Positions 1,660 through 16,101 of a stretch of DNA of 64,000 bases are shown in pieces. Below the pieces are notes generated by a model that had not been told where the DNA came from, ran no database searches, and saw nothing but the letters and a program-made list of their open reading frames with translations. Positions within the stretch are counted from its first letter, which is position 1. Every line of letters begins with the position of its first letter. Made by a program: the position numbers and the translations under genes. The stretch covers positions 62,001 through 126,000 of IMG/VR virus record IMGVR_UViG_3300043425_001539. One strand, given 5' to 3'.

Positions 1660-1673
1660 AACAATTATAATTT

Positions 1674-2300: not shown

Positions 2301-2361
2301 AAACTCTAATAATGTCTAAGACATTATCTCTTTCTTTTTTCATATTTTTATTTTTTCTTAA

Positions 2362-2907: not shown

Positions 2908-2909
2908 AA

Positions 2910-3257
2910 TTACGATATTTGATTCATTATAGCTGAATGCACCCGTGAGCCTAAACCAGATAAACGGTAAGTCTTTGATCCATTCTTTTCAGATATTTTA
3001 AAATATCTAGTGTTTTTATTAATCCATTTTCTGCTGGTGGCCCCACCTGTTTCTTCATTCATACCAGCTATAAATTCCATAAGCTCTTCATGTGTCACTT
3101 CACCTGATTCTTTAACAAATGAAAGAATTTTTTCGCGAATAGGCGCAACTGAAGAAATTTCCATTTTAGGATATTTATCAGTATATCTTCTTTTAATTGT
3201 TAACTTTTCCTCATTAATAAATTCATCAAAAGAAAGCGTATGTCTTTCGTTAGTCAT
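2910..3257 (-). CDS. Hypothetical protein, possible winged helix, with CTS-like leader
   Basis: 115 aa; leader TLSFDEFINEE; helix-helix-strand pattern ending in TYRLSGLG. Confidence 0.6.
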   Translation of the reverse strand: MTNERHTLSFDEFINEEKLTIKRRYTDKYPKMEISSVAPIREKILSFVKESGEVTHEELMEFIAGMNEETGGATSRKWINKNTRYFKISEKNGSKTYRLSGLGSRVHSAIMNQIS

Positions 3258-3280
3258 AAATTAATTTTATTTTTATCTTT

Positions 3281-3289
3281 TTATATATC
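3281..3289 (-). promoter_or_regulatory. Candidate late-promoter motif GATATATAA
   Basis: Intergenic, 23 nt upstream of the ATG at 3257. Confidence 0.6.
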
Positions 3290-3291
3290 AA

Positions 3292-5025
3292 TTAATTATA
3301 AAAAAATTTGTCAAAAGACGATTTAATTTGTGTCCAATAAGGATGTACGCATTCCGGTGTTAAATTCTTAAACTCTTTTAAATTATCTTCAGTTAAACAT
3401 TTTTGCAATTTAGATATTGCTTTATTATTTATTTTTTGAATCTGAACAGGTTTGTTTTCTTTAGAAAAATAAATAGTCTTAAGCCCATCTTGTTCGGATT
3501 TTAGATCATTAAAACTTTGTTCTGTTGCAATGATTACGGGTTCATATTTGGGTCTTAATGAATCCAATATTTTTTTAAAGAAAGGACGATCCATTATTTT
3601 ATAATCTATCAGAAGTTCATCGTTATCTTGTAACAATGAATTAACAATCTTTTCTTTATTGTCTTCATCAGATCCATACATTTTTTCAGCCAAAGAATTG
3701 CTATGTATTAACAAAATTTTGTGGCCATTTAATTTTTTAAGTCTATCAGCTTCCTCAATAACATCTTTTGTCAACAAATTAAAATTTGTTATAATAACAT
3801 TTACCGGTGTTTTTCCAACGGTTTCATTCTTTCTAAGACTAAAAAATCTAGTAAGTAAACTTACAGCTTTAACATAATCCGCAGCCGATTCATCGTTTAA
3901 ATTATTTTCTAAGCTTTCAGTTTTTTCTTCTTTAAGTATTGAAGAAAACTCTAAAAATGAAAAATCGCCTCCAGCTAATTTGTTAATTTCTTCAATTTTT
4001 TCGTTAAAAGAATTTGCTACACTTTCGCTAATTAATCCGCTTTTATATTTAGGCTTTTTAAGATTGGTTAAAAATATAGAATATAAATACTCATAATTTT
4101 TATTATTTTCAAGAATCTCTAAAGTTTTGGGATTTTTAATCCATTTTTTGGATAAATTTCCTGACTTACTTAAAAAATCTGGACGTTTTAATCCAGATTC
4201 TAAAAATTCTTGTCCTTTCTGTACAACATATTCATTAAAAATTTCCGAAACTATTTCAATATAAGATTCATCGGGGTTAGCAGATGAAATTTTAATATTA
4301 TTAATAGGGAATGATTCTAAGTGTTCGCAAATGTTTAATAAAACTACATCAAAAAGATGACTACGAGATTCATTTATAATATCTGTATCCTTGCCTAATT
4401 TGATAAGTTCATTTTCAAATTCAAATATTAATGCTTCAACGTTTCTAAGTTTCTTGTTAAGAAACCCTTGTGTATAAATTTCTGATTCTGTTAATAATAA
4501 ACTGTTATTTCCTATTAAAGAATTAATAGTTTCTTCGGATAATTTTCCTTCAAATACAGGTTTTGCGTAATCAACTTTAAAAAGCTGCGACCATCTTTCA
4601 AAAACCGTAGTATCTTTAACTTCATTAATTACATCAAATTTGTTATTTCTTACAGTAATGTCTGTTAATATTAATCCGTTCTTTGGTGTTTTTTCATATT
4701 CTGTAACCAAAGGCATGTTTGAAGGAAACCAAGAAAACCCAAATCTATGTCTAACAGGTATGGATTTTTTTAATTCGTATGGAAGATTTTCAATATAATC
4801 AATAGCAGACTCATATAAATCACTTATTGTACGATCTATGCGTGATAATGGAACTTTTCCATTTTTTCCGTAAAATTGAAACTTATATGTTTTAGGATTT
4901 TTTTCAAATGAAAACCGAAAAGCATCAAATTTTTCAGTCACGCGCACTTCTTGTGAAAGAATTTGCTTTGCTTTATCCTGACCGTATTTATTTACAAAAG
5001 TGTTAAAATTTTTTATTCCTGCCAT
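3292..5025 (-). CDS. Ligase-like nucleotidyltransferase domain fused to a degenerate HIGH/cytidyltransferase-like domain
   Basis: N-terminal VTEKFDA resembles ligase motif I (KxDG). C-terminal LQKCLTEDNLKEFKNLTPECVHPYWTQIK aligns by eye with VRQALRNDDKALFNELMPKELHKYYDELK of ORF 8495-9076. Confidence 0.6.
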   Translation of the reverse strand: MAGIKNFNTFVNKYGQDKAKQILSQEVRVTEKFDAFRFSFEKNPKTYKFQFYGKNGKVPLSRIDRTISDLYESAIDYIENLPYELKKSIPVRHRFGFSWFPSNMPLVTEYEKTPKNGLILTDITVRNNKFDVINEVKDTTVFERWSQLFKVDYAKPVFEGKLSEETINSLIGNNSLLLTESEIYTQGFLNKKLRNVEALIFEFENELIKLGKDTDIINESRSHLFDVVLLNICEHLESFPINNIKISSANPDESYIEIVSEIFNEYVVQKGQEFLESGLKRPDFLSKSGNLSKKWIKNPKTLEILENNKNYEYLYSIFLTNLKKPKYKSGLISESVANSFNEKIEEINKLAGGDFSFLEFSSILKEEKTESLENNLNDESAADYVKAVSLLTRFFSLRKNETVGKTPVNVIITNFNLLTKDVIEEADRLKKLNGHKILLIHSNSLAEKMYGSDEDNKEKIVNSLLQDNDELLIDYKIMDRPFFKKILDSLRPKYEPVIIATEQSFNDLKSEQDGLKTIYFSKENKPVQIQKINNKAISKLQKCLTEDNLKEFKNLTPECVHPYWTQIKSSFDKFFYN

Positions 5026-5063
5026 TTCTTTTTGGGCTTTTGGTTTTTTCTTTTACCTGTTAT

Positions 5064-5072
5064 CTATATATC
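5064..5072 (-). promoter_or_regulatory. Candidate late-promoter motif GATATATAG
   Basis: Intergenic, 38 nt upstream of the ATG at 5025. Confidence 0.6.
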
Positions 5073-5087
5073 ATATTGAGAAATTCA

Positions 5088-6221
5088 TTAAACTACTTGT
5101 CTAAATTCAATAGATTGTAAATCAAACAACAATGATACATCTGTTGCACTAAATCCAGTGTTCCATATTGCTAAACTATTAAATCGAACAGGCACATATG
5201 TTGTAGCATCCATAATAAAACATTCCTCTGTATTTCCTATTTCAATTGTTTGATATGTAGTACTGCTTTGAAAATCTCCACTTACATATAAAGCATATCC
5301 GTATTCCGAACTATTTGTTAAAACAATATTTGCCCAGTTTACTGGAACCGAACCAAGTTCAGCTGATAGATTAACATTGCCCGCTCCGCCAGGGTTTAAA
5401 TTACAAGAAACGCCTACAATACCTGAACCTTCGTCAGCAAGACTGATTGATATAGCATTACCTACATCATCTAAAAAACTAAATAATTTTGCACCAGCAT
5501 TAATAGCTGCAACTCTTACCCATATACTAATTGTAAAACTTGTACTTGTTTTAAGTAAATCAGTAACTCCAGTATCAATATACCCTCTTTCTTGCGCGTC
5601 AGTACCAAAGTCCAAAAACCAAGGTAATTCAGTAGGTGCGGATGGATGCCATCCATAAAGACCGACAGGTGAACCTGATACTGCTTGCACAAAAGACCAT
5701 GCATAATTATTTAAGCTTAAATCTTTTCCACTTCCGTATATTTGATAGTCGGTTGATAAACTTGGAGGAACACATAACCATTGATTAACGTCAAAAAAAT
5801 AAGATAAGTTTCCTATTTTTGGTATGGTTTTAAATCTATTAGAAATAACCGTGTCAGTTACAGCAGTTGTCATATACCACTGAATAGCATTAGGAACAGT
5901 TGAATATGTTGCACCTGCTAAATCCGTCGTTCTTATAGGAAAAATTTCATTAACGCCTGTGCCTCCGCTAAAAACAACAATTGACGGCCCTTCAGATGCT
6001 TTATATGAATAAATAGCGCATCCTGCAGTTGACCCAAATTCACCAGGCCCACTTCCTCCGCTTGACGGCGGATCAAGAACAGAATAATATCCAGTTACCG
6101 GAGTTTCACCATAGTCTCTGTATCCTACTCCAAAATTAAAACTATTAAAACGTAATGCATTTGCATCTGTCCCAGCCGCAGTTTCACCGCCTGCTACGCC
6201 ATGTATAGGTTTGTCTGGCAT
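5088..6221 (-). CDS. LamG/concanavalin A-like domain virion protein
   Basis: C-terminal SFTISIWVR...WANIVLT...YALYVSG...FNSLAIWNTGFSATDVSLLF is a LamG-type pattern. Confidence 0.7.
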   Translation of the reverse strand: MPDKPIHGVAGGETAAGTDANALRFNSFNFGVGYRDYGETPVTGYYSVLDPPSSGGSGPGEFGSTAGCAIYSYKASEGPSIVVFSGGTGVNEIFPIRTTDLAGATYSTVPNAIQWYMTTAVTDTVISNRFKTIPKIGNLSYFFDVNQWLCVPPSLSTDYQIYGSGKDLSLNNYAWSFVQAVSGSPVGLYGWHPSAPTELPWFLDFGTDAQERGYIDTGVTDLLKTSTSFTISIWVRVAAINAGAKLFSFLDDVGNAISISLADEGSGIVGVSCNLNPGGAGNVNLSAELGSVPVNWANIVLTNSSEYGYALYVSGDFQSSTTYQTIEIGNTEECFIMDATTYVPVRFNSLAIWNTGFSATDVSLLFDLQSIEFRQVV

Positions 6222-6236
6222 ATTTTAAAACTATTT

Positions 6237-6374
6237 TTAGTTATAAATGATAGAAATATAAAAATTATAAGCGTCTTCTTCTTTGCCATAATAATTTTTA
6301 TAATATTCACCATTTTCGGAATATTCAACCCACCAGTTTGAACCGTCAAAATCCATATTCACAAATTTTTTCAT
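6237..6374 (-). CDS. Small 45-aa aromatic/acidic protein missed by the ORF track
   Basis: ATG overlaps the TGA of 6371-7384 (ATGA coupling); MKKFVNMDFDGSNWWVEYSENGEYYKNYYGKEEDAYNFYISIIYN fills the gap. Confidence 0.55.
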   Translation of the reverse strand: MKKFVNMDFDGSNWWVEYSENGEYYKNYYGKEEDAYNFYISIIYN

Positions 6375-7384
6375 AGCCCATAACTATTTTTCATTGCTTC
6401 ATATACCGCAGATATTTCAGCATCTGATAACATTCTATTGTAACATAAAACCGCGCCTATTCCTCCATTTGTACATGTGTTGGTATATCCTGTACCTATA
6501 CGAATTTCACCTGCTGGTACTAATGCAGTATTACTTCGGCATAAAAAATCAGCAACCCAAGGTGTACCGTTTTTACTAGAAAAACCTGTTCTACAAGCAG
6601 TAGTTTTTCCCGTTGATAATTTAACAGCCATCATATTCCAAGCATTAGCTGTTGTTTGTGCAATGGCGCCAGTATCGTAGGTAGGAGTCTTTCTGCTATA
6701 ATAACTAAATGCAGAAGTGGTTTCCCATGTTATAGCAAGTTCTTGTTCATATGAAGCATATATAGTTCCAGCTTTTTCAAAAATAGTCTTTCTTACAGCT
6801 CCTTGTGAACCGTACACCCAAAAAATAACTGTACAGTCTCCACCTAAATCAACAAGATTTGAGTTTGTACTACAATTCCAAAAGCCTGAACCATTAAAAG
6901 CAAATCCTGGATAACCTCCCAAAGATTGAAGCGGAGTTAAAGTATTATTGGAATTAAATTTTAATCCTTGTGCTATATCATACCAAGATGTGCTTCCGCT
7001 ATTATAGCTAATTACATTATGAGGCAATAAACACAAAGTTAATCCATCAGTTATAATAGGTTCTATATTAGCGCCTAAAACCATTTTATCATTTTCGGTG
7101 TTAAAATAATTCATACATTCCGAAAAAGTTGTGAATCCCGCACCTGAAATAGAATTTGTTATTCTAATTAGCTCTTCTTCATTAGAAGCAATTCTTATAG
7201 AAGGGCCACCGGATATCCTATTTTGATATACGGCATAACCGCCAGTAGGAGGATCAATTCCATTCCAAAAATTTGTTAAACTAGTCGGGCCTTTTGCTTG
7301 ATCTCCAGTTCCAATATAAAAGTTGCCTTTTTTTAACGCATTTGTTTCAGCAACTTCAGCGCTATATTTAATGGCATTTGGCAT
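6371..7384 (-). CDS. LamG/concanavalin A-like domain virion protein
   Basis: CTVIFWV...WNMMAV...IGAVLCYNRMLSDAEISAVY LamG-type ending. Confidence 0.7.
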   Translation of the reverse strand: MPNAIKYSAEVAETNALKKGNFYIGTGDQAKGPTSLTNFWNGIDPPTGGYAVYQNRISGGPSIRIASNEEELIRITNSISGAGFTTFSECMNYFNTENDKMVLGANIEPIITDGLTLCLLPHNVISYNSGSTSWYDIAQGLKFNSNNTLTPLQSLGGYPGFAFNGSGFWNCSTNSNLVDLGGDCTVIFWVYGSQGAVRKTIFEKAGTIYASYEQELAITWETTSAFSYYSRKTPTYDTGAIAQTTANAWNMMAVKLSTGKTTACRTGFSSKNGTPWVADFLCRSNTALVPAGEIRIGTGYTNTCTNGGIGAVLCYNRMLSDAEISAVYEAMKNSYGL

Positions 7385-8259
7385 TAACTTGGTAAAGGTA
7401 ATTTTGCATCTTCCAATTTATCAAAAAAATCTTGATAAATTTTTTCTCTTGCTTCAGGATATTTAAAAGCTGTAGAATCAATTAAATCTTTAAGCTTTTC
7501 ATATGTATTAATATCATTAGGCGCGTGTTTACCTGTAAATAGCAATTTAACTACTTCTTCGGGAGTATTTGTTATAAATCTATCATAATCTTTTAAAAGT
7601 TGTGCAGTTTTAAGTAATCCTTTTTTACCTTCAAAACTTTTTCTTACTTGCACTATTCCTTGATTTAACCTAACAACATACGATTGAAATTCTGCAGTCT
7701 CTCCGCTTTCAGATTTTTTAGTTACTTCAAAAAAAGATTTTCCAATTGCAGACATTAACAATAAATTTCTGTAAGCTCCTTTATATCTTGATTCAGCAAT
7801 TCTAAAATCAGGTGAATGATATATGAATCTACTCCAGCTTAAATCAGTAGAAAGCATAAAGTCAACTTGTGCGTATCCTTTTGATACAAATCCGCTAACA
7901 GGCGCTGCTATACTTACTTGATTAAAACCAGGCATCAATTTAGTTTGGTACCCAAGTTTTTTAAGTTCGTCATTTAACGCAAAAAGAGCATTTTGCAAAG
8001 GAACTCCAAAAAAACCTGCAATCTTATCAGCCGATACTGCAATGTCAATATCACCGCTTGTCTGATCAGGAAGTTTTTTACCTGCTGAACCTATAAGAGC
8101 AGCATCTTTATCCAAACCTTCTAATCCTATTTTAGGAAATATTTCTTTTGCTATCCATTTTGCAGTTTCAATTACTTCAGTTTGATTAATAGGGCGAACG
8201 TCGTCAACAGCATTTCCACTTTCTTTGATGTATTGCTCAAAAAGTTTAACATATTTCAT
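7384..8259 (-). CDS. DNA Pol-beta-superfamily nucleotidyltransferase with CTS-like leader
   Basis: LIGSAGKK...SGDIDIAV (GS...DxD) and a third Asp in AQVDFML. Start moved to ATG 8259 (MKYVKLFEQYIKE), just after the upstream stop. Confidence 0.8.
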   Translation of the reverse strand: MKYVKLFEQYIKESGNAVDDVRPINQTEVIETAKWIAKEIFPKIGLEGLDKDAALIGSAGKKLPDQTSGDIDIAVSADKIAGFFGVPLQNALFALNDELKKLGYQTKLMPGFNQVSIAAPVSGFVSKGYAQVDFMLSTDLSWSRFIYHSPDFRIAESRYKGAYRNLLLMSAIGKSFFEVTKKSESGETAEFQSYVVRLNQGIVQVRKSFEGKKGLLKTAQLLKDYDRFITNTPEEVVKLLFTGKHAPNDINTYEKLKDLIDSTAFKYPEAREKIYQDFFDKLEDAKLPLPS

Positions 8260-8261
8260 AT

Positions 8262-8498
8262 TTAAGAATTTGTCTTTATCCATGCTTTAATTGCATCTTC
8301 AGCAGCCTTTCGTAATTTTTCTGTGTCTGCAGGACTAAAATCACCAGATTTTATATCCGAGAAAGAATTAGCAACACTTTCCCAAAAAGCATCAAGAGCA
8401 TCTTCGGCTACTTGACTAATTTTTTGCGAGCTGTAATTAATGCCTTCATCTAATGAGTCCTGATTTAAAAAGTTTTTAAATGTTGTAAAATGTTTCAT
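8262..8498 (-). CDS. Small acidic protein with CTS-like leader
   Basis: 78 aa, MKHFTTFKNFLNQDSLDE; overlaps the upstream stop by 4 nt. Confidence 0.65.
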   Translation of the reverse strand: MKHFTTFKNFLNQDSLDEGINYSSQKISQVAEDALDAFWESVANSFSDIKSGDFSPADTEKLRKAAEDAIKAWIKTNS

Positions 8499-9076
8499 TG
8501 TTTTATGTATTTTTTTAGTTCATCATAATATTTATGCAATTCTTTTGGCATTAATTCATTAAACAAAGCTTTGTCATCATTTCTTAACGCCTGCCTAACT
8601 TTTGTTCCACTTGGTCCATCTCCTTCTCTTGCATCAACCAATCTAACAGAAAAATTAGCATCAACTGGTGTATCAGTTTTAGGACCTGTTATGTATTCAA
8701 CCTGTCTCTGATAATCCTTCATGCGGTCAGCGCCTGCGCCTAATCCTAAAGGTTCATATCCCAATTCTCTGATGTATTGAACCATTAAAGGAATCACAGT
8801 TTTTTTACCTGTAGGATATATTTGAAAATCTTTAATAAAAGAATTGTTACGAACAACATCTCTAGCCATTTTTTGAAGTAAAGTATCAGGAAAAGGCGAT
8901 TCTTCTTTTGCCGATAATATTTGTAATGCAACAACAGGTTTTCCGAAAATTTCTGAAGTTCTCTTTAAGGCGGCTAAATGACCCTTATGAAAAGGCTGAA
9001 ATCTACCAGGAAAAAATACTACCTCATTATTTGAGTTTTCGTTTATAAATGATTCAAATGTTTGAACGTGTCTCAT
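8495..9076 (-). CDS. HIGH-motif nucleotidyltransferase (cytidyltransferase-like/NMNAT-like) with CTS-like leader
   Basis: FPGRFQPFHKGH (HxGH), GAGADR and SGTKVR (KMSKS-equivalent). Confidence 0.85.
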   Translation of the reverse strand: MRHVQTFESFINENSNNEVVFFPGRFQPFHKGHLAALKRTSEIFGKPVVALQILSAKEESPFPDTLLQKMARDVVRNNSFIKDFQIYPTGKKTVIPLMVQYIRELGYEPLGLGAGADRMKDYQRQVEYITGPKTDTPVDANFSVRLVDAREGDGPSGTKVRQALRNDDKALFNELMPKELHKYYDELKKYIKQ

Positions 9077-9092
9077 AATATTTTAAATTTTT

Positions 9093-9644
9093 CTATACAG
9101 ATATTTTTTTTGTATCCGTAGATCCTATAAAATCTTTTTTAACCATAACTGTGATAATGACAAAAATCAAATTACCTGAATCATTTTTTAGAGCACCTAT
9201 TATGTTTAAAAAATTTTTATCGTTTCTTATCCAATACTTTTGTCCTATCTCATCAATTCCTTTTAGTTGATTGTTTGCAATTTTAGGTAATGCTTTATTT
9301 ATTTGATCGACTATATCATTATCTTTTATTTCGTTATCATACCCATGTCTAAACTTTCTTATTTCTGCATGTGTCGTGGTATTTAAAATAACTTTCATAG
9401 GAATTGTACTTTTAATTGCTCCGATATTTCTTTCTATCAATTTTTTATTATCTAATCCATCAATAACCGAAAAACTTAACAATTCTTTATACTGATTTTC
9501 CGCTATTAAATTATTATTACATATTGATTTGATGGTTAGCTTTTCATTATTTATTTCAATAAAATCTTCAACTTGATAATTAGAAAAAAATTCAAATGCT
9601 TCTTGATTTTGGATAAATGATTCAAAAGTTTGAACGTACTCCAT
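9093..9644 (-). CDS. Hypothetical protein with CTS-like leader
   Basis: MEYVQTFESFIQNQE; C-terminal HAEIRKFRH...IITVMVKKDF could be a BECR/RelE-like nuclease fold (weak). Confidence 0.6.
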   Translation of the reverse strand: MEYVQTFESFIQNQEAFEFFSNYQVEDFIEINNEKLTIKSICNNNLIAENQYKELLSFSVIDGLDNKKLIERNIGAIKSTIPMKVILNTTTHAEIRKFRHGYDNEIKDNDIVDQINKALPKIANNQLKGIDEIGQKYWIRNDKNFLNIIGALKNDSGNLIFVIITVMVKKDFIGSTDTKKISV

Positions 9645-9906
9645 AATATTTTTTTATTTTAACTTTAAGATCAGTAGATCCTTTGATAACCCGATGAATT
9701 ATACCAGCGGGTATATGTATTTTTTTATTGATAGGAATAGGTAATTCATTATCAAATTGAAAAAACCAATCATTTTCATTCAAAGGTTCAACGTCTCTGT
9801 CTTCTTCATCCCAATGCCATTTAAGTTCGCTTTCATCAACGTTGGCATCAAAATGACGAACTAATTCATTGCTATTCACTTTAGATTCATCAAAAGGTTT
9901 AATCAT
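9622..9906 (-). CDS. Small cupin-like protein
   Basis: KWHWDEEDR...WFFQFDNELP...IPAGIIHRVIKG cupin pattern. Confidence 0.7.
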   Translation of the reverse strand: MIKPFDESKVNSNELVRHFDANVDESELKWHWDEEDRDVEPLNENDWFFQFDNELPIPINKKIHIPAGIIHRVIKGSTDLKVKIKKYYGVRSNF

Positions 9907-9911
9907 ATATT

Positions 9912-9920
9912 TTATATATC
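9912..9920 (-). promoter_or_regulatory. Candidate late-promoter motif GATATATAA
   Basis: Only 5 nt upstream of the ATG at 9906, immediately after a terminator. Confidence 0.55.
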
Positions 9921-9970
9921 AAATAAAAAATCCTGCCTTACAATGCAAAAATACAAAGTAAAGCAGGATT
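9921..9970 (-). terminator. Rho-independent terminator
   Basis: Minus strand AATCCTGCTTTAC / GTAAGGCAGGATT 13-bp stem (one U.G pair) followed by a U-tract, about 20 nt after the stop of 9992-10183. Confidence 0.75.
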
Positions 9971-9991
9971 TGGATTTTTTAATTGATAAAA

Positions 9992-10183
9992 TTAAGCAGG
10001 AGTTTCTTGCTCACTTTTAATTTTAGCAATCACAGACCAAATGCCACCGATAAGTGTAACAAAAGCGCCTGATAGCTCTTCATAAACTCCATTTTCAACG
10101 TAACCTCTCATTACCAAAATACCGCCGGCAAATGTAAGTACGTGTCTAATGACGCCTAATACTTGTTCTCTTGTGAATTTCAT
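9992..10183 (-). CDS. Small two-TM holin candidate (Pam3-gp28-like)
   Basis: 63 aa; EQVLGVIRHVLTFAGGILV and GAFVTLIGGIWSV hydrophobic segments. Confidence 0.6.
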   Translation of the reverse strand: MKFTREQVLGVIRHVLTFAGGILVMRGYVENGVYEELSGAFVTLIGGIWSVIAKIKSEQETPA

Positions 10184-10199
10184 AGTTTAAAATTTTATT

Positions 10200-10208
10200 T
10201 TATATATT
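10200..10208 (-). promoter_or_regulatory. Candidate late-promoter motif AATATATAA
   Basis: Intergenic, 16 nt upstream of the ATG at 10183. Confidence 0.55.
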
Positions 10209-10219
10209 AAGATTAAAAA

Positions 10220-10759
10220 TTACCAAGGCTCATCACTCTGCAAACCCAATTGCTTGCCAAATAATGAGGGAGCATAACAGCTCCAAAACCCAGGTTTGCT
10301 TGGATCCATTCTGGCCTTTGTGTCACATTGCTGTCTTGCCCAAAAACTTGCAGCTGCTTTTGGGTCATCATTTTTTATGCTTAGTCCGCTGGTATCACCC
10401 CATTCAATTTTTGTAGCTAAGATGTTGCCGTCATCATCTTTTTTCCCACTGTTATGATAAACAAAAAATTTCTTGTCTCCGCCTCTTGTAGGAGTATCAA
10501 GTTCAACATCTAATAGTTTGCCATCATCGGATTTAAACTTTGCCTTTTTTCCTACTTCTAAATTTTTTGTCATCCATGCAGCTTTACCTTTCAATATTAT
10601 GTTGCCTTCATCCCAATATTTTTTGGTTTCCTCAAAAAGATTACGATATGCATCACTTCCTAAACGATACACTGAATTAGTTATATCCAAACCGTTTTCC
10701 ATGTGATACCTAAAGCCTTCACTCACAATAAAATCATTAAAATCTTTAACGTATTTCAT
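10220..10759 (-). CDS. Conserved phage protein with SFWARQQC...FWSC motif and CTS-like leader
   Basis: ATG 10759 gives MKYVKDFNDFIVSE. C-terminal DPKAAASFWARQQC...PGFWSC recalls a widespread phage domain of unknown function. Confidence 0.65.
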   Translation of the reverse strand: MKYVKDFNDFIVSEGFRYHMENGLDITNSVYRLGSDAYRNLFEETKKYWDEGNIILKGKAAWMTKNLEVGKKAKFKSDDGKLLDVELDTPTRGGDKKFFVYHNSGKKDDDGNILATKIEWGDTSGLSIKNDDPKAAASFWARQQCDTKARMDPSKPGFWSCYAPSLFGKQLGLQSDEPW

Positions 10760-10790
10760 TTTGTCATCCAAGTTTGTATTTTTATATTCA

Positions 10791-11243
10791 TCACATTCTT
10801 TCTTTTGTAAATTTTACAAGTTTATTTTTTTCAATGTAATCTTCATACAATTTTGCATTCATTAACGGTTCTTCATATACCATAATGTATCCTTCATCTT
10901 CCCAAAATTGTAAAAATTCTGGTATTTTCTTTTCTAATCCACACGTGAGAGAAAAACTGCTGCTAGGAGGGACTACTCCCAAATCTAAAGCAAGCTGTGT
11001 GCGTTTAAATTTGCCTCTTTCTTCAGTAAAAAGTTTAGGGTAATGCAATTCCATTGGCCACGCAATTGATGAATTGTATTTAAGCTCATTATAAAATGTT
11101 ATTGAACAACTTTCAATATTTCGTTTATCACGAGAATAAAGTTTCCACCAGACGTATTTGGCTTTATTATTTTTTCCTTCATTGATTTCAGCATGTTTTC
11201 CGTTTTCTGCTAAATATTTATCAAAATTATATATGTGTTTCAT
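10791..11243 (-). CDS. Hypothetical protein with CTS-like leader
   Basis: Start moved to ATG 11243 (MKHIYNFDKYLAE), 1 nt after the ferritin stop. Confidence 0.6.
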   Translation of the reverse strand: MKHIYNFDKYLAENGKHAEINEGKNNKAKYVWWKLYSRDKRNIESCSITFYNELKYNSSIAWPMELHYPKLFTEERGKFKRTQLALDLGVVPPSSSFSLTCGLEKKIPEFLQFWEDEGYIMVYEEPLMNAKLYEDYIEKNKLVKFTKERM

Positions 11244-11244
11244 A

Positions 11245-11838
11245 TTAGAAGTATGTTTGTTCAAAGAAAAGTAATTCAAACGGATTTGACGGATTGACTA
11301 ACTCAAGCGCGTTTAAATAGTCTGAATATTCTTCAACTTCGCCATTTTGGATATCAACGTATTGTTGTATGAAATTAAAGGTAGCAGGATCTAAGCTAAC
11401 CAAAAACTTTTGATTTTCGGAATACGCATTTAATAAGGTTTCCTCAATCATATAAGCTTTGTTAATAATATCAACTAAACCCGAAAAATTAATTGTGGTA
11501 TGTACTTGCGGAATAACAGGTAAAGCATTCCATTGAGTAATGTAATCTTGTAAACCTTTTGCGTGACCCAATTCGCCTTCCGCTTCTTTGTTAAAAAAAT
11601 CAGCAGCCTTTTTATAATTTGCATTTTTACACCAGTTTGCGGCATTTCTGTAAAAGAAATATGCTGTATATTCATCGCCCAATCTTTCATTTAATAATTG
11701 TTCAACTTCAGGCAAAAGTTTTTTAGGTTTAATAGGTAAAACTGTTGAAGACATACCTATAGAGTGAAAAGATTCGTTAACGCCTGAATCCGCGGGTTTT
11801 TTAGATTTTGAACTTCTAAAAGATGAAAAATTTTCCAT
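11245..11838 (-). CDS. Non-heme ferritin (FtnA-like) with N-terminal extension
   Basis: Ferroxidase-like residues in GDEYTAYFFY, EAEGELGHA, YMIEE and DIQNGEVEEY, spaced as in bacterial ferritins. Confidence 0.85.
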   Translation of the reverse strand: MENFSSFRSSKSKKPADSGVNESFHSIGMSSTVLPIKPKKLLPEVEQLLNERLGDEYTAYFFYRNAANWCKNANYKKAADFFNKEAEGELGHAKGLQDYITQWNALPVIPQVHTTINFSGLVDIINKAYMIEETLLNAYSENQKFLVSLDPATFNFIQQYVDIQNGEVEEYSDYLNALELVNPSNPFELLFFEQTYF

Positions 11839-11878
11839 TTAAAAAAATTATTTTATGTATTCTTTATACTTATTATAT

Positions 11879-12163
11879 TTAATATATTAAGTTTTCCCAG
11901 TTAAACCCTTCACCAAGAAATTCATCATTAAACTTTGTTGAACTTAAAAGATTTCCTTGACTGTCGTATATGTTCCACATAATTACGCCATGTTCATTGG
12001 TGATTTCAATTTTTCTTTCTCCATATTCGGAAACATATGTGGTTGATGCTACATCAGTTGCGTCGTTATATTTCCACCCTAAACTTTTTAGGTCAAGAAC
12101 AAGATCTTGCCATTCAGTATCGGATTCATTAATAAATGTTTTAAAACTATTAATATAATGCAT
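11879..12163 (-). CDS. Hypothetical protein with CTS-like leader
   Basis: Start moved to ATG 12163 (MHYINSFKTFINES), 1 nt after the upstream stop. Confidence 0.6.
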   Translation of the reverse strand: MHYINSFKTFINESDTEWQDLVLDLKSLGWKYNDATDVASTTYVSEYGERKIEITNEHGVIMWNIYDSQGNLLSSTKFNDEFLGEGFNWENLIY

Positions 12164-12164
12164 A

Positions 12165-12638
12165 CTATTTGTATTTTTTAATCCAATTTTCAAATACTGT
12201 AACAGGAGTCCTGTGCGCCATATTTTCGTAATGAAAAACATTGTTACCATTTCCCATTATTTGCAACCATTGCACTGTTTGAAAAGGTTTAATAACTTGA
12301 TCATTTAAACCCAAAATAATAGTATTGGTTACCTTTTTACCTCCTTTGGGATCAGGCGAAATGTTAACATGTATGCTACGATTATGCAAAGCTGGATTAA
12401 ATAATAAAGTAGGAATATTGGTTTTTGTTGAAATGCAATACGATATCCATCCGCCCATTGAAGACCCAATCAAAAGATCAATCTTTTTTTCTTTAATTTC
12501 TGATATAATTTTATCATAATTAATATTACTTTGGTAGTTCATAGGCGGATCATACACATAATCAAAATATTTGCGCAAAATATCATTTTTCTCTGTGTAA
12601 GGATCGGATTCTAATCCGTGAAAATATGCAACTTTCAT
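12165..12638 (-). CDS. YqiA/YcfP-like alpha/beta hydrolase
   Basis: YFHGLES, LLIGSSMGG (GxSxG), LLFNPAL, Asp in LNDQV and His in MAHR. Confidence 0.85.
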   Translation of the reverse strand: MKVAYFHGLESDPYTEKNDILRKYFDYVYDPPMNYQSNINYDKIISEIKEKKIDLLIGSSMGGWISYCISTKTNIPTLLFNPALHNRSIHVNISPDPKGGKKVTNTIILGLNDQVIKPFQTVQWLQIMGNGNNVFHYENMAHRTPVTVFENWIKKYK

Positions 12639-12643
12639 AATAA

Positions 12644-13237
12644 TTATTTTTTTGGTCTGCCTAACATAATTTTATCGTGAACATGCCCTCCAATCGTTCT
12701 GCTATACCATCCATCACCTGAAGCATTATTTTTGGTTCCTATCCAGTTAATTGGTTTACCTAAAATTTTGGCAACCAATTCAGCATCATCAACAACAGGA
12801 ACGTTATATTTATTCATTAAAATTTCCGCAATTTTGCCCGAAACTTCAATGTAATGTCCTAATTTTTTAAGCTCAGTGCCACGCATCTCTAAATACTTTC
12901 TTTTGGATGCGGCATCGCCGTCGTGTCCTACTCCGGAATATTTTATGCCATGCTTTGTCTTTTCTCCAAAAATAATAATATCAAAGTTATTATCATTATG
13001 AATATCAACCCCTTCCCAATAATTCCAATCAGGATCAGAAAAAACATCTTTAGGCGTTTTTACTTTAACGTGTCCTCCTATCTCAGCATATGCAATGGAA
13101 ATTAATTCATAAAATTCATCAGCCAATTCAGGATGTTTTTTAGGATCAAATGTTATAGCTTTATTTCTAACAGGATTAAAAATTTCTCCTGAAGATTTTT
13201 CATTTAAAAAGCTTTCAAATGTTTGAACATATCTCAT
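12644..13237 (-). CDS. Conserved hypothetical protein with CTS-like leader
   Basis: MRYVQTFESFLNEK leader; 197 aa alpha/beta; no firm family assignment. Confidence 0.6.
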   Translation of the reverse strand: MRYVQTFESFLNEKSSGEIFNPVRNKAITFDPKKHPELADEFYELISIAYAEIGGHVKVKTPKDVFSDPDWNYWEGVDIHNDNNFDIIIFGEKTKHGIKYSGVGHDGDAASKRKYLEMRGTELKKLGHYIEVSGKIAEILMNKYNVPVVDDAELVAKILGKPINWIGTKNNASGDGWYSRTIGGHVHDKIMLGRPKK

Positions 13238-13248
13238 TTTTTTAACAT

Positions 13249-14988
13249 TTATTTATTATATACAAGAATAGAACGAATTTGATGAAGAGCCGCAAAAATT
13301 CCTGTAAATTTATATAATTTTCCTTTGTATAAAAAAGTTATACCTTCGGTAGGCACAATTGATTCTAATCCGCCGGCCGCCGCAACTCTTTCCAATTCAT
13401 ATTCCATTTTTTTAATTGCGTCTTCTCCGCCTTCCTTGCGGATTTTAGCAATAACACTATCAATTTCTTTTTTCATTTCTTCAGCTGCTTTAGTTGGATT
13501 TGCTGATAGAAACGAAGAAACATTTTTCATTACTTCGGTGCCTAATTCCAAAAATATTGATTCAAGCGGAAGATATACTCTTTTTTTTAATTCTTTTTCG
13601 CGAGTCTTTTCTAAATTAATAAACCATTCGGAAACGTTTACTGCTAAATTCTTTTTAATATTAGCAACTGTAAATGACTTATCTATGCCTGCTATCCTCT
13701 TTCCAAGCGCATCTAAATATTCATCAGGTATATCAATATTATCTCTTTTAGCAAGATCCTGTAGCATCCTTTTTGCATTGCCTAAAGCGTATTCTTCAAC
13801 GCTCGAAGAAAGATTAGTACCGCTTTCTTTCATTATTTTATTTAATAAAGAATAGTAGTATGCTTCCCTTGATTTGGTATTAGGCAAAGGTTGTAATGAA
13901 ATATCTTGAGGTCCTCTTACATAAAACATTTCTTGCGCAGCAGCATTTGCATCAGCAATTAATTTACCTAAATCTCTGCCAGCCTGTTTATCTTCGCCAA
14001 TAGGGTTTCCATTTTCATCATATTCAATAACTCCATGAAATACCAACATATTTTGTCCATAAGGTACAGTATTTTGTGTAACTGGAGTTATAATTTCAAC
14101 GCTTGCAAATTTTCTTCCGTTTGCAAAATATTTTTCTTTGATGGCATTGCTTAACGATCCTACAGAAGAATTCAAGTCTTTCATTGCGGCAACAAACGCA
14201 ATTTCTATGTCGCCTCTTCCCGCAAACATATTGGCAATTCCTTTTATTGTCAAAGAATCTTGCCCAAAATTTTTAATATGACTTTTATTACGAGCTGCTC
14301 TAATTTCTCCGTCCTTCCATGATATTGATAGCTGCTGGCCGTCTGTGTTATGAACCAATATGCCATTAGCAAAATATCTATGATTATTACCTACTGTTAA
14401 ATCATAACATTTTTCGGTAGATACAATTTTACGAATTGATTTTACTTTTGATCTTTTGCTTAAATTTTCGGTATCCCGCAAATCTTTTTTCCAGACAGTT
14501 AAAACTTCATCACCTTCTTTTATTTCGTCAGCTCTTAGGTCAAACCCGTTAACATAAATTCTATGATTCGGCGTAGTTCTAATAATTTGTCCGTCTTCGG
14601 TTTCTATTTCAATCCATTCTGTTGCTTCTTCATTTTCAACCCAATCCATAATTGGTTGATATGAAATTTCTCCTAATTCATTGGATGTTAAAATATCATC
14701 TTCAATTTTTGATTCTACTAAATCTTTAATTGAAATTAATCCTTTTGATTTTAAAGAAACGATAGTATCTCCGGACAAACATTTCTCTTGTGTAAAATTT
14801 TCAGGTCCAAAAGAGCCATTCACCGCAGCACTTATCATATCCTTTATATCCTGCATTGATAAATCAATATCCTCAAAAGGATGCGAGAGGTGCCCGTAAG
14901 CACCTCCTTCATTTATTTTATCATTAACATTAAAGTTTGCTATACGGCTTTCTTGAATAAGAAATTCTTTATATTTTAAAAAAGTCAT
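13249..14988 (-). CDS. Ligase-like (KxDG) nucleotidyltransferase-fold protein containing a mini-intein; CTS-like leader
   Basis: After intein removal it reads GGAYGHLSHPFED...FTQEK-TDGQQLSISWKDGEIRAARNK, with ASVEII and LVFHG as further ligase-like motifs; 434 aa when spliced. Confidence 0.75.
   Translation of the reverse strand: MTFLKYKEFLIQESRIANFNVNDKINEGGAYGHLSHPFEDIDLSMQDIKDMISAAVNGSFGPENFTQEKCLSGDTIVSLKSKGLISIKDLVESKIEDDILTSNELGEISYQPIMDWVENEEATEWIEIETEDGQIIRTTPNHRIYVNGFDLRADEIKEGDEVLTVWKKDLRDTENLSKRSKVKSIRKIVSTEKCYDLTVGNNHRYFANGILVHNTDGQQLSISWKDGEIRAARNKSHIKNFGQDSLTIKGIANMFAGRGDIEIAFVAAMKDLNSSVGSLSNAIKEKYFANGRKFASVEIITPVTQNTVPYGQNMLVFHGVIEYDENGNPIGEDKQAGRDLGKLIADANAAAQEMFYVRGPQDISLQPLPNTKSREAYYYSLLNKIMKESGTNLSSSVEEYALGNAKRMLQDLAKRDNIDIPDEYLDALGKRIAGIDKSFTVANIKKNLAVNVSEWFINLEKTREKELKKRVYLPLESIFLELGTEVMKNVSSFLSANPTKAAEEMKKEIDSVIAKIRKEGGEDAIKKMEYELERVAAAGGLESIVPTEGITFLYKGKLYKFTGIFAALHQIRSILVYNK
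14347..14781 (-). mobile_element. Mini-intein, 145 aa, no homing endonuclease
   Basis: Block A CLSGDT, block B TTPNH, block F CYDLTV, block G YFANGILVHN followed by Thr as the +1 nucleophile. Confidence 0.92.
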
Positions 14989-15002
14989 TAGATTTTGTTT
15001 TT

Positions 15003-15686: not shown

Positions 15687-15704
15687 TCTTTTGGATTTTA
15701 TTTT

Positions 15705-16073: not shown

Positions 16074-16076
16074 AAT

Positions 16077-16085: not shown

Positions 16086-16101
16086 ATATGCGTTTATGAT
16101 A

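What the first reader, a model, noticed from the sequence alone, without database searches (positions are those of the whole stretch)
3292..14988. Cluster of four nucleotidyltransferase-fold proteins from three superfamilies, all leader-tagged: candidate undescribed RNA-repair or counter-defence system
Seen: ligase-like KxDG protein with intein (13249), ligase-like plus HIGH fusion (3292), Pol-beta GS..DxD enzyme (7384) and stand-alone HIGH enzyme (8495) within 12 kb, each with the CTS-like leader. Known: phages use RNA ligases and Pol-beta/CCA-type enzymes to repair tRNAs cut by anticodon nucleases; Pol-beta enzymes also make cyclic-nucleotide signals or AMPylate proteins; HIGH enzymes make NAD/CDP-type activated metabolites. 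Inference: a multi-component adenylyl/cytidylyl transfer pathway injected before phage gene expression, for example tRNA end-healing or neutralising nucleotide-depleting defences. The substrate cannot be read from sequence.
Basis: partly seen in the sequence, partly recalled or inferred. Interest (0 to 1): 0.85.

Follow-up and report, generated by a model that had tools for sequence, protein, structure and literature searches.

The report
Leader-tagged phage nucleotidyltransferase repair module
An uncultured marine jumbo phage encodes a conserved trio of enzymes (a new ligase-like protein split by an intein, a polymerase-beta-type enzyme and a HIGH-motif enzyme), plus a fourth RNA-ligase-2-like protein; the trio probably mends broken RNA ends, and its T4-like N-terminal tags suggest it travels inside the phage head.

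Summary
The four genes exist as described, all on the minus strand. A (3292-5025) folds like T4 RNA ligase 2 plus an NMNAT/PPAT-like domain. That domain's HIGH motif is degenerate, and A's N-terminus (MAGIK...) is part of the ligase fold, not a leader. B (7384-8259) is a polymerase-beta-superfamily enzyme of an unnamed family; it is not RlaP. C (8495-9076) is a catalytically intact HIGH nucleotidyltransferase. D (13249-14988) carries a 145-residue mini-intein exactly inside motif I (EK|TDG). It belongs to a very conserved ligase-like family with invariant K, D, G, E-G and K motif residues.

B, C and D are functionally linked. Metagenomic proteins fuse them in several orders (HIGH-B-D, HIGH-D-B, HIGH-B-DUF6267). 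Some fusions add CCA-adding enzyme, P-loop kinase, HD or Nudix domains. This favours RNA-end repair, a known phage theme (RNA ligase plus RlaP).

B, C, D and at least nine neighbours carry a leader resembling the T4 capsid targeting sequence. It ends in the T4 prohead-protease motif (hydrophobic-x-Glu) directly before the conserved core. Packaging and injection are inferred, not shown.

Verdict: a real feature, a new variant of a known kind.

The parts
13249..14988 (-). D: precursor of a ligase-like covalent nucleotidyltransferase (579 aa) with leader, intein and a large helical insertion
   Evidence: ORF. 439 homologues, about 64% identical and mostly intein-free at about 430 aa. Invariant H33, H36, K69, D71, G72, E153, E403, G404 and K415. 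The same invariant residues are shared with DUF6267 domains. The top PDB fold hit is T4 Rnl2 but is not significant (E 0.88). BFVD RNA-ligase domain hit at prob 0.97, E 0.016.
14347..14781 (-). Mini-intein (145 aa, no homing endonuclease) inserted between K69 and T of motif I (EK|TDG)
   Evidence: Pfam Intein_splicing 1e-12, Hint 3e-8, PT-HINT 3e-7. Boundaries C70...HN214|T215. At least 12 other family members carry an intein at the same site.
14908..14988 (-). Predicted propeptide of D: leader helix plus variable linker, ending I-N-E just before GGAYGH
   Evidence: 95 of 97 family members have hydrophobic-x-E directly before the conserved GGAYGH. The extension is 14-56 aa long. The leader is modelled as a helix followed by a disordered linker.
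8495..9076 (-). C: stand-alone HIGH-motif (HUP class) nucleotidyltransferase, 193 aa, leader MRHVQTFESFINE (9038-9076)
   Evidence: PF01467 1.9e-7. TIGR00125 36.1 bits against a cut-off of 27.7. Best PDB match is MJ0541 NMNAT, confined to the motif regions. 111 of 120 family members carry the leader.
8262..8498 (-). 78-aa leader-tagged ORF between C and B, function unknown
   Evidence: No family hit.
7384..8259 (-). B: Pol-beta-superfamily nucleotidyltransferase (291 aa from the ATG at 8259; the longest ORF starts at 8283), leader MKYVKLFEQYIKE (8221-8259)
   Evidence: GS(65-66), D78xD80 and D141 are nearly invariant. 700 representative clusters. Atlas structural neighbours NTP_transf_2, TM 0.78, and Pol X palm/thumb, about 0.5. 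Relatives either carry a leader ending x-E before GGNA or start directly at MGGNA.
3976..5025 (-). A, N-terminal about 350 aa: RNA-ligase-2-like adenylyltransferase plus helical domain. Motif I is EKFDA, motif IV EALIF, motif V LIKLGK. No leader.
   Evidence: Foldseek hits: T4 Rnl2 E 1.8e-8, Trl1, Rnl3, REL1, Rnl5. The distant homologue P0091 hits Pfam RNA_ligase at 1.2e-7. Motif table. N-terminus conserved as MAGIK.
3292..3828 (-). A, C-terminal about 180 aa: NMNAT/PPAT-like Rossmann domain with a degenerate HIGH motif
   Evidence: Foldseek hits to NadD, NMNAT and PPAT, TM by target 0.56-0.63, prob 1.0. C aligns to the equivalent domain of the LR756500 homologue at 1.5e-16. HxGH is lost in the marine clade but kept in P0091 (HPGH) and L002 (TLGH).
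15705..16073 (-). Leader-tagged ORF (122 aa), conserved next to UvsW in relatives
12644..13237 (-). Leader-tagged ORF (197 aa), unknown
   Evidence: No Pfam, NCBIfam or Atlas lead.
11879..12163 (-). Leader-tagged ORF (94 aa), unknown
10791..11243 (-). Leader-tagged ORF (150 aa), unknown
10220..10759 (-). Leader-tagged ORF (179 aa), 68-76% identical in relatives, unknown
9093..9644 (-). Leader-tagged ORF (183 aa), unknown
2910..3257 (-). Leader-like ORF (115 aa), unknown
1336..1659 (-). DUF5824 protein with a leader-like N-terminus (TTG start)
1..1287 (-). Leader-tagged ORF running off the window start (at least 428 aa), weak AAA_16/HTH_38 hits
16102..17619 (-). UvsW-like helicase; synteny anchor that marks the upstream edge of the leader-gene block

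Best explanation
B, C and D are the separate-gene form of a widespread, uncharacterised phage three-enzyme module. C is a HIGH-motif nucleotidyltransferase, B a Pol-beta-type nucleotidyltransferase, and D a divergent lysine-nucleotidyl ligase-like enzyme. A is a fourth, RNA-ligase-2-like protein whose attached HIGH-like domain has lost its motif.

Most likely mechanism, all steps inferred:
- The module repairs broken RNA ends, probably tRNA.
- B adds back missing 3' nucleotides, as RlaP and CCA enzymes do.
- D, and possibly A, seals 3'-OH/5'-phosphate ends through a Lys-AMP intermediate, once the intein has spliced out of motif I.
- C supplies an adenylyl-transfer step. Its acceptor is unknown. 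One candidate is direct adenylylation of a 5'-phosphate, chemically like NMN to NAD.

In this phage clade B, C and D, like many neighbours, begin with a T4-type capsid targeting leader that ends in a hydrophobic-x-Glu site. They are therefore probably loaded into the prohead, trimmed by a T4-like prohead protease and delivered with the DNA.

What is shown: the fold and motif assignments, the intein, the fusions, the synteny and the leader pattern. What is inferred: the substrate, the order of steps, packaging and injection.
For: Functional linkage:
- P0225 = HIGH-B-D family. P0335 = HIGH-D family-B. P0254, P0262 and P0284 = HIGH-B-DUF6267. Many more are B-HIGH or HIGH-B.
- Microcystis phage Mel-JY01 has a HIGH-D-like fusion.
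- A itself is a ligase plus HIGH-like fusion.

Co-occurrence:
- A, C and D families share the same long contigs, for example those of 317744, 88435 and 21871 bases.
- Syntenic blocks exist in L004 (UvsW..D..C..B) and L002 (UvsW..D, A).

RNA-repair context:
- P0289 = HIGH + PolyA_pol/CCA head + RNA-binding + AAA_33 kinase + HD + B. P0301 = HIGH + PolyA_pol + B.
- A matches RNA ligases far better than DNA ligases.
- RNA ligase plus a Pol-beta NTase is a documented phage repair pairing (PMC7824862; bioRxiv 10.64898/2025.12.29.696909).

Catalytic competence:
- D has invariant K69/D71/G72/E403/G404/K415.
- An intein sits in that motif, recurring at the same site in at least 12 other family members.
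- C keeps HxGH and SGTKVR.
- B keeps its carboxylate triad.

Leader:
- T4 IPII/IPIII start MKTYQEFIAE. The window has M[KR]x[VI]xTFESF[IL]NE.
- T4 targeting depends on residues 4 and 7, and processing on residues 8 and 10 (PMC9026906).
- 95 of 97 D and 70 of 75 extended B proteins have hydrophobic-x-E immediately before the conserved core. 20 B relatives start exactly at that core.
- In the 317-kb relative, at least 22 of the 27 genes after UvsW carry the leader.
Against: - No kinase, phosphatase, 2H or RtcB end-healing gene was found in the window. There is also no tRNA gene.
- D's ligase fold is not statistically established: PDB E 0.88, no Pfam or PDB profile hit, and hhalign to A's ligase domain only P about 0.004-0.006.
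- B is not RlaP by HMM or by hhalign to T4 NrdC.11. Its motif looks as much like Pol X as like RNA-specific enzymes.
- The role of C is unexplained.
- Nudix fusions fit NAD/ADP-ribose chemistry equally well.
- D sits next to replication genes, and inteins favour replication proteins, which fits a DNA role.
- Three A orthologues have Met instead of the motif I Lys.
- No prohead protease or head gene lies in the window, and no proteomic evidence for packaging exists.
Confidence: 0.4

Rival explanations
1. This is a DNA-end or gap repair/replication module. B acts as a minimal Pol X-like gap-filling polymerase. D is the phage's DNA ligase, working on the phage genome during replication, packaging or after entry.
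For: - B's GSxxKK...SGDIDI pattern and its Atlas neighbours include Pol X palm/thumb proteins. Seven relatives weakly hit DNA_pol_B_palm.
- D lies beside UvsW, an exonuclease, a primase and a gp32-like SSB.
- D is unusually conserved (about 64%) and carries an intein, as replication proteins often do.
- One B relative is fused to a PD-(D/E)XK nuclease.
Against: - D has no OB domain and no DNA-ligase HMM or PDB hit.
- Its nearest annotated fold neighbours are RNA ligases.
- Fusions with a CCA-adding enzyme head, its RNA-binding domain, an AAA_33 kinase and an HD domain point to RNA.
- A replication ligase has no obvious need for a cleavable N-terminal leader.
Confidence: 0.2
2. This is a nucleotide-cofactor or counter-defence metabolism module. 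C is an NMNAT-like enzyme that rebuilds NAD or makes another dinucleotide. The partners use or process that product, to offset NAD- or nucleotide-depleting defences.
For: - C's HIGH motif is identical to that of archaeal NMNAT MJ0541, and its best family names are NMNAT/PPAT.
- Some B-family fusions carry Nudix domains, as bifunctional NMNAT-Nudix enzymes do.
- Jumbo phages are reported to carry several NAD-synthesis enzymes (PMC7824862).
Against: - C scores 30 bits against NMNAT equivalog cut-offs of 127-181, and the match is confined to the motif.
- No NAMPT, PRPP-synthetase-like or ADP-ribose enzyme was seen in the cluster.
- This reading does not explain the repeated fusion to ligase-like and Pol-beta domains or to a CCA-adding enzyme.
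Confidence: 0.12
3. The leader is not a capsid-targeting propeptide. It is a shared N-terminal module spread by recombination among genes of a hyperplastic region, or a tag for some other localisation or turnover. The enzymes act in the cytoplasm after ordinary expression.
For: - No head gene or prohead protease is in the window, and no proteomics exists.
- Three leaders are nearly identical at the DNA level, as recombination would give.
- Homologues without a leader exist.
- T4's own RNA-repair enzymes are not packaged (established knowledge of T4).
Against: - The pattern is kept at the amino-acid level despite different codons.
- It matches the T4 CTS in length, aromatic spacing and the I/L-x-E end.
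- The hydrophobic-x-E sits precisely at the border of the conserved cores in two unrelated enzyme families.
- The phage has T4-type replication and baseplate genes.
Confidence: 0.3
4. A, and possibly other members, is a pseudo-enzyme with a structural or assembly role. The precedent is T4 RNA ligase 1, which doubles as the tail-fibre attachment factor.
For: - A's HIGH motif is lost. Motifs I and IV have Gly replaced by Ala. Three orthologues have Lys replaced by Met.
- A follows two LamG-domain proteins that match virion structural PHROGs.
Against: - Lys, Asp (motif I), Glu (motif IV) and Lys (motif V) are kept in 47 of 50 family members.
- D, B and C keep all their catalytic residues.
Confidence: 0.12

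Closest known systems
T4 RNA ligase 2 (RnlB) and the Rnl2/REL1/Trl1 adenylyltransferase clade
   Same: A's model superposes on full-length T4 Rnl2, covering both the nucleotidyltransferase and helical domains (E 1.8e-8). D shares the motif I, IV and V residues. D lies a few genes from uvsW, as rnlB does in T4.
   Different: A has Ala for Gly in motifs I and IV and carries an extra NMNAT-like domain. D has an HxxH motif upstream of motif I and a helical insertion of about 210 residues between the N- and C-terminal halves of the core. D has no significant sequence or fold score to any solved ligase.
RlaP (PF10127) plus RNA ligase repair systems of phages and bacteria
   Same: A Pol-beta nucleotidyltransferase is genomically coupled to RNA ligases. 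RlaP adds one or two nucleotides to damaged RNA 3' ends before ligation.
   Different: B does not match PF10127 or T4 NrdC.11. The module also contains a HIGH nucleotidyltransferase and a different ligase family. No RtcB, RtcA or Pnkp is adjacent.
T4 internal proteins IPI-III, their capsid targeting sequence, and the packaged enzyme Alt
   Same: A short N-terminal leader with aromatic residues three apart, ending in I/L-x-E. It sits on many unrelated proteins clustered in a variable region. Packaged, injected enzymes are known (Alt; PMC5512222).
   Different: The leader is 13 rather than 10 residues. It is followed in D by a variable linker and a second hydrophobic-x-E site. The cargo would be nucleic-acid enzymes rather than small basic proteins or an ADP-ribosyltransferase. 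Packaging is untested.
Pfam DUF6267 (PF19782)
   Same: Same layout and the same invariant residues as D: H..H, K-x-D-G, N..Y, E-G and K. Same fusion partners, HIGH and B.
   Different: No member of the D family reaches the DUF6267 model even at E 0.1. Identity is 14-17%. No paper in the searchable library mentions DUF6267.
Archaeal NMNAT / PPAT (HIGH, HUP-class nucleotidyltransferases)
   Same: C has GRFQPFHKGH and an SGT-x-x-R signature, and a size of about 180 residues. A's C-terminal domain has the same fold.
   Different: C falls far below every equivalog cut-off. Its acceptor is unknown. It is a fusion partner of nucleic-acid enzymes rather than of cofactor-pathway enzymes.
Polyvalent proteins of phages (Iyer et al. 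2017)
   Same: The giant relatives (P0227, P0289, P0301; 1600-1800 aa) string several catalytic domains together. This resembles polyvalent proteins, which are predicted to be packaged and injected.
   Different: In the window the domains are separate genes, each with its own leader. No MuF, portal or MPTase domain is attached.

Membership tests
Covalent nucleotidyltransferase (RNA ligase, Rnl2-like): protein A | Adenylyltransferase fold similar to solved RNA ligases | tested here: met
   Foldseek against PDB: T4 Rnl2 E 1.8e-8, Trl1, Rnl3, REL1, Rnl5, all prob 1.0.
Covalent nucleotidyltransferase (RNA ligase, Rnl2-like): protein A | Motif I KxDG lysine, motif IV EG, motif V K | tested here: inconclusive
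   K32, D34, E197 and K209 are present. Gly is replaced by Ala in motifs I and IV. Three orthologues have Met for Lys.
Covalent nucleotidyltransferase (RNA ligase, Rnl2-like): protein A | Match to the Pfam RNA_ligase (PF09414) model | tested here: not met
   A has no Pfam hit. Only the distant homologue P0091 hits PF09414, at 1.2e-7.
Covalent nucleotidyltransferase (ligase-like): protein D | Motif I KxDG plus motifs IV and V conserved | tested here: met
   K69, D71, G72, E403, G404 and K415 are invariant in 97 sequences and across DUF6267 domains.
Covalent nucleotidyltransferase (ligase-like): protein D | Significant fold or profile similarity to a solved ligase | tested here: inconclusive
   PDB top hit is T4 Rnl2 but at E 0.88. 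BFVD RNA-ligase domain at prob 0.97, E 0.016. Atlas TM 0.38-0.40. hhalign to A's ligase domain P 0.004-0.006. PDB profile searches found nothing.
Covalent nucleotidyltransferase (ligase-like): protein D | Formation of a Lys-NMP adduct and strand sealing | not testable with these tools
   Needs purified spliced protein and labelled NTP.
DUF6267 (PF19782): protein D | Match to the family model | tested here: not met
   None of 97 D-family members matched at E up to 0.1. The shared layout and invariant residues suggest a distant relationship only.
Pol-beta nucleotidyltransferase superfamily: protein B | hG[GS] x9-13 D-h-[DE]-h plus a third carboxylate | tested here: met
   G65, S66, D78, D80 and D141 are invariant or nearly so in 74 sequences.
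Pol-beta nucleotidyltransferase superfamily: protein B | Profile or structural match to superfamily members | tested here: inconclusive
   B has no Pfam or PDB hit. Relatives hit DNA_pol_B_palm (7 members, best 0.009) and NTP_transf_2 (3 members, best 9e-5). Atlas predicted-structure neighbours are NTP_transf_2 proteins at TM 0.78.
RlaP (PF10127): protein B | Match to PF10127 or to T4 NrdC.11 | tested here: not met
   No PF10127 hit among 74 members. hhalign to T4 NrdC.11 gave prob 0.15.
RlaP (PF10127): protein B | Genomic association with RNA ligases | tested here: met
   Fusions and synteny with the D, DUF6267 and A families.
HIGH (HUP-class) nucleotidyltransferase: protein C | PF01467/TIGR00125 match with HxGH and ISxTxxR-type motifs | tested here: met
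   PF01467 31.8 bits (cut-off 21). TIGR00125 36.1 bits (cut-off 27.7). HKGH and SGTKVR are present.
NMN adenylyltransferase equivalogs: protein C | Score above the curated cut-off of an NMNAT model | tested here: not met
   29.8-31.4 bits against cut-offs of 127-181, with only about 30 residues aligned.
HIGH nucleotidyltransferase: C-terminal domain of A | HxGH signature | tested here: not met
   The fold matches NadD/NMNAT/PPAT, but the motif reads T-K-D-V and is degenerate in all close relatives.
Intein (HINT) | HINT domain with Cys1, TxxH block, terminal HN and a +1 nucleophile, interrupting a conserved host motif | tested here: met
   Pfam hits. C70, TPNH and VHN|T215. The exteins rejoin to the EKTDG seen in intein-free orthologues. 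Splicing activity itself is not testable here.
T4-type capsid targeting sequence | N-terminal leader of about 10 residues with key aromatic positions, ending in (L/I)-x-E | tested here: met
   Compared with T4 ipII/ipIII read from the T4 record. Residue roles from PMC9026906. Consensus.
T4-type capsid targeting sequence | T4-type prohead protease and scaffold encoded by the same phage | not tested
   No head module lies in the 64-kb window, and the rest of the 238-kb contig was not available.
T4-type capsid targeting sequence | Cargo found in virions with the leader removed | not testable with these tools
   Needs virion proteomics of a cultured relative.

The most novel reading that the evidence does not exclude
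An uncultured clade of marine jumbo phages loads its capsid with dozens of protease-matured cargo proteins addressed by one T4-like leader. Among them is a complete, previously unrecognised nucleic-acid repair kit:
- a new ligase family (D/DUF6267-like);
- a Pol X-like tailing enzyme;
- a HIGH nucleotidyltransferase that adenylylates RNA 5'-phosphates directly, giving a lysine-independent route to ligation. This would explain why ligase domains lacking the lysine (L002, three A orthologues) persist beside HIGH domains.

The kit would be active from the moment of DNA entry, before any phage gene is expressed.
Probability: 0.15. Interest if true: 0.85.

Novelty: new variant of a known kind. Interest (0 to 1): 0.62.

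Why it matters
- It defines a three-enzyme module that recurs in hundreds of phage lineages. B alone has 700 representative clusters at E of 0.001 or better in a library clustered at 50% identity. Databases annotate these proteins only as hypothetical or 'cytidyltransferase-like'.
- The fusion network gives a testable hypothesis for DUF6267-type proteins and for a phage HIGH enzyme with no known acceptor.
- If the leader is a true capsid targeting signal, T4-style protein delivery extends from small anti-restriction proteins to nucleic-acid enzymes. It would then also be a portable tag for loading cargo into marine jumbo-phage capsids.
- The intein placed inside the ligase motif is a natural marker of the catalytic site.

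Tried and rejected
- Megablast of the whole region against phage records found nothing.
- BLASTP between A and D, and between A and C, showed no pairwise similarity.
- Sequence and profile searches of PDB with B, the D family, the A family, a D+DUF6267 alignment and the B family gave nothing significant.
- hhalign of the full D family against the A family gave prob 0.24. With the helical insertion removed, it gave only P 0.004-0.006, aligned on motif I.
- hhalign of the D family against the DUF6267 domain of P0254 and against the N-terminus of P0236 found nothing.
- hhalign of the A and D families against the single sequence of T4 Rnl2 was in register on motifs but not significant.
- B against T4 RlaP (NrdC.11) found nothing.
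- The D family was not matched by Pfam DUF6267.
- NMNAT equivalog membership for C was rejected on score.
- The sigma-70 promoter and terminator scan was no better than shuffled sequence.
- No tRNA genes or Rfam families are in the window.
- The Atlas and PDB gave no lead for the leader proteins at 12644-13237 and 1-1287.
- The literature search for DUF6267 returned no papers. Burroughs and Aravind 2016 (PMC5062991) is not held.
- Considered and dropped: CD-NTase/cyclic-nucleotide signalling and protein AMPylation for B. No supporting hit or context was found.

Full report
SETTING
The window is AT-rich (about 31% G+C), and every gene in the first 20 kb is on the minus strand. It has no close DNA relative among deposited phages.

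Neighbouring genes mark it as a large myovirus with T4-type modules:
- a UvsW-like helicase, a PD-(D/E)XK exonuclease, a primase and a gp32-like SSB;
- further along, a gp6-like baseplate wedge and several giant ORFs.

Its proteins recur on metagenomic contigs of 90-326 kb, some from Tara samples. The window's own D protein is recorded on a 238-kb contig. I call the four proteins of the finding A (3292-5025), B (7384-8283), C (8495-9076) and D (13249-14988).

PROTEIN D
- Pfam finds a HINT/intein domain at residues 78-214. The intein runs from C70 to N214, window 14347-14781. It has a TxxH block, a terminal HN and Thr at +1. At 145 residues it has no room for a homing endonuclease.
- It splits the string EK|TDG. 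About 100 intein-free orthologues of about 430 aa have the uninterrupted EKTDG. At least a dozen others carry an intein at the same point.
- The family is strikingly conserved, about 64% identity across 439 hits. H33, H36, K69, D71, G72, E153, E403, G404 and K415 are invariant.
- In the AlphaFold model of the orthologue P0098 (pLDDT 80.8), the strands around motif I pack with two C-terminal strands carrying E-G-I-T-F and K-G-K-L-Y-K. These are the expected motifs IV and V. A helical insertion of about 210 residues lies between them.
- That insertion probably explains why whole-chain fold search is weak. T4 RNA ligase 2 is the top PDB hit, but at E 0.88. A phage RNA-ligase domain scores prob 0.97, E 0.016 in BFVD. 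The Atlas lists RNA_lig_T4_1 clusters at TM 0.38-0.40.
- Profile searches of PDB and Pfam find nothing. With the insertion removed, hhalign aligns D's motif I region to A's at P about 0.004-0.006.
- An alignment with DUF6267 domains shows the same invariant residues: H..H, KxDG, N..Y, EG and K. The DUF6267 model itself does not detect D.
- I conclude that D is very probably a lysine-nucleotidyl (ligase-type) enzyme of a new, DUF6267-like family. This rests on motifs and several weak, concordant signals, not on one significant match.

PROTEIN A
- The model (pLDDT 85.8) matches T4 Rnl2 over its full length at E 1.8e-8. Next come fungal Trl1, archaeal Rnl3, trypanosome REL1 and Naegleria Rnl5. 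Its last 180 residues or so match NadD, NMNAT and PPAT, with TM by target 0.56-0.63.
- A distant homologue, P0091, hits Pfam RNA_ligase and CTP_transf_like directly.
- C aligns to the C-terminal domain of the A homologue of huge phage LR756500 at 1.5e-16.
- In A and all its close relatives the HxGH signature is gone. P0091 keeps HPGH and LR756500 keeps TLGH.
- Motif I reads EKFDA and motif IV reads EA-L-I-F. Three orthologues have Met in place of the lysine.
- The N-terminus MAGIK... is conserved across the family and modelled as part of the domain. It is not the leader.

PROTEINS B AND C
- B has no hit of its own in Pfam, NCBIfam or PDB. An exhaustive search finds 700 representative clusters.
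- In 74 aligned relatives, G65, S66, D78, D80 and D141 are invariant or nearly so. Some relatives weakly hit DNA_pol_B_palm, NTP_transf_2 and Polbeta.
- Atlas structural neighbours are NTP_transf_2 proteins (TM 0.78) and Pol X palm/thumb proteins (about 0.5). B is not RlaP.
- C passes the Pfam and TIGR00125 cut-offs and keeps both catalytic signatures. It resembles NMNAT only at those motifs.

ARE THEY ONE SYSTEM?
Yes, for B, C and D. A local domain census of the long B-family proteins, with Pfam checks, gave these architectures:
- HIGH-B-D family (P0225);
- HIGH-D family-B (P0335);
- HIGH-B-DUF6267 (P0254, P0262, P0284);
- B-DUF6267-HIGH (P0359);
- DUF6267-B, many B-HIGH and HIGH-B forms, and multi-B proteins.

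Microcystis phage Mel-JY01 has a HIGH-D-like fusion annotated 'cytidylyltransferase like protein'. BFVD's best matches to D are 'cytidyltransferase-like domain-containing' phage proteins of 825-915 aa.

Synteny and co-occurrence agree:
- In the window C, a 78-aa ORF and B are consecutive, in the same order as in the fusions.
- In a 317-kb relative the order is UvsW..D..ferritin..C..B within 9 kb.
- In LR756500, D and A are adjacent, downstream of UvsW.
- The A, C and D family tables share many longest-contig lengths, for example 317744, 88435 and 21871.

WHAT DOES IT ACT ON?
Evidence for RNA:
- Two giant relatives join HIGH and B to a class II CCA-adding/poly(A) polymerase head with its RNA-binding domain. 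One of them also carries an AAA_33 P-loop kinase and an HD domain (P0289, P0301). These are the classic partners of tRNA end healing.
- A's fold neighbours are RNA ligases, not DNA ligases.
- The literature describes jumbo-phage RNA repair built from Rnl1/Rnl2 ligases with the Pol-beta enzyme RlaP. RlaP adds one or two nucleotides to damaged RNA 3' ends (PMC7824862; bioRxiv 10.64898/2025.12.29.696909).

The most economical reading is an analogous pathway built from non-orthologous parts.

Evidence against, or left open:
- The window has no kinase/phosphatase and no tRNA genes.
- B's motif is Pol X-like.
- D sits among replication genes.
- Nudix fusions would also suit NAD or ADP-ribose chemistry.
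- C's role is open. Because HIGH enzymes adenylylate phosphate acceptors, direct adenylylation of a 5'-phosphate end is a chemically plausible but untested idea.

THE LEADER
- Read from the T4 record, IPII and IPIII begin MKTYQEFIAE. In T4, targeting depends on residues 4 and 7, and processing on residues 8 and 10 (PMC9026906).
- In the window, 12-13 minus-strand ORFs begin M-[KR]-x-[VI]-x-[TS]-F-[EKN]-x-[FY]-[IL]-x-E. All lie within 1-16.1 kb, and none are in the other 48 kb.
- In the 317-kb relative, at least 22 of the 27 genes after UvsW carry it. So do 111 of 120 C-family proteins, with consensus MKY[VI]KTFESF[IL]xE|A.
- The codons differ between paralogues while the residue classes are kept.
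- Most telling, 95 of 97 D proteins have hydrophobic-x-Glu immediately before the invariant GGAYGH, after an extension of variable length (14-56 residues). Likewise 70 of 75 extended B proteins have it immediately before GGNA. Twenty B relatives start exactly at M-GGNA.
- That is the specificity of the T4 prohead protease, placed at a domain boundary. I therefore regard a cleavable targeting propeptide as the best reading.
- No head gene or protease is in the window and no virion data exist, so packaging and injection remain inference.

VERDICT
There is a multi-enzyme nucleotidyl-transfer pathway, most likely RNA-end repair, and it is plausibly capsid-delivered.
- It is a new variant of a known kind (phage RNA repair; T4-style internal proteins). 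The novel parts are a DUF6267-like ligase family, a distinct Pol-beta family and a HIGH enzyme acting as the fusion hub.

Noticed in passing
window 1-16073 (minus strand); L004:8500-20700: A whole block of unrelated small genes shares the same 13-residue leader: 12-13 in the window, and at least 22 of 27 in the 317-kb relative. It looks like a hyperplastic region of putative capsid cargo, most of it without any family assignment.
   Followed up: partly
window 3280, 9911, 10199, 16076, 21098, 22678, 60514 (minus strand): ATATATAAA occurs seven times, always on the coding strand and always in an intergenic gap just upstream of a start codon. The total count is not above chance. The orientation and placement suggest a phage promoter, possibly T4-late-like.
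   Followed up: partly
window 9929-9970: An inverted repeat (AATCCTGC ... GCAGGATT) is followed by a T-run and then by the ATATATAAA motif. The terminator-then-promoter arrangement recalls the T4-like PeSL elements.
   Followed up: no
window 11245-11838: A ferritin-like protein (Pfam Ferritin 3e-20) sits inside the block and is conserved beside D in the 317-kb relative. It has no canonical leader.
   Followed up: no
window 5088-6221 and 6371-7384: Two paralogous LamG/concanavalin-like proteins lie between B and A. One matches PHROGs of virion structural proteins.
   Followed up: no
window 12165-12638, 1674-2300, 2362-2907, 1336-1659: UPF0227 (YqiA-like) esterase, a GAF-domain protein with an N-terminal hydrophobic segment, a DUF3008 protein and a DUF5824 protein.
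   Followed up: no
window 26000-32000: G+C rises to 0.38 against about 0.30 elsewhere, across the 1906-aa ORF 26054-31774.
   Followed up: no
L009:7788-9840 (Sinorhizobium phage Phosso genes 446-447): A 412-aa protein beginning with a ligase motif-I-like SEKLDG overlaps the start of the B homologue, which begins MGGAAF without a leader. hhalign to the A family gives only E 0.012.
   Followed up: partly
P0191 (D-family homologue, 693 aa): It carries a ROS/MUCR zinc-finger insertion directly after GGAYG, a second kind of insertion in this gene family.
   Followed up: no
P0218, P0252 (B-family relatives): The B domain is fused to a DruA-like region (Druantia) and to a PD-(D/E)XK nuclease respectively.
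   Followed up: no
L010 (T4 108636-114440) compared with window 13249-17619: In T4, rnlB (RNA ligase 2) lies about 3 kb from uvsW. In the window and its relatives, the ligase-like D lies two small genes from the UvsW homologue. This may be a remnant of synteny or a coincidence.
   Followed up: no
window 62704-63900: A 398-aa protein with S1 RNA-binding domains (Pfam S1 8.6e-21) lies next to the baseplate genes.
   Followed up: no
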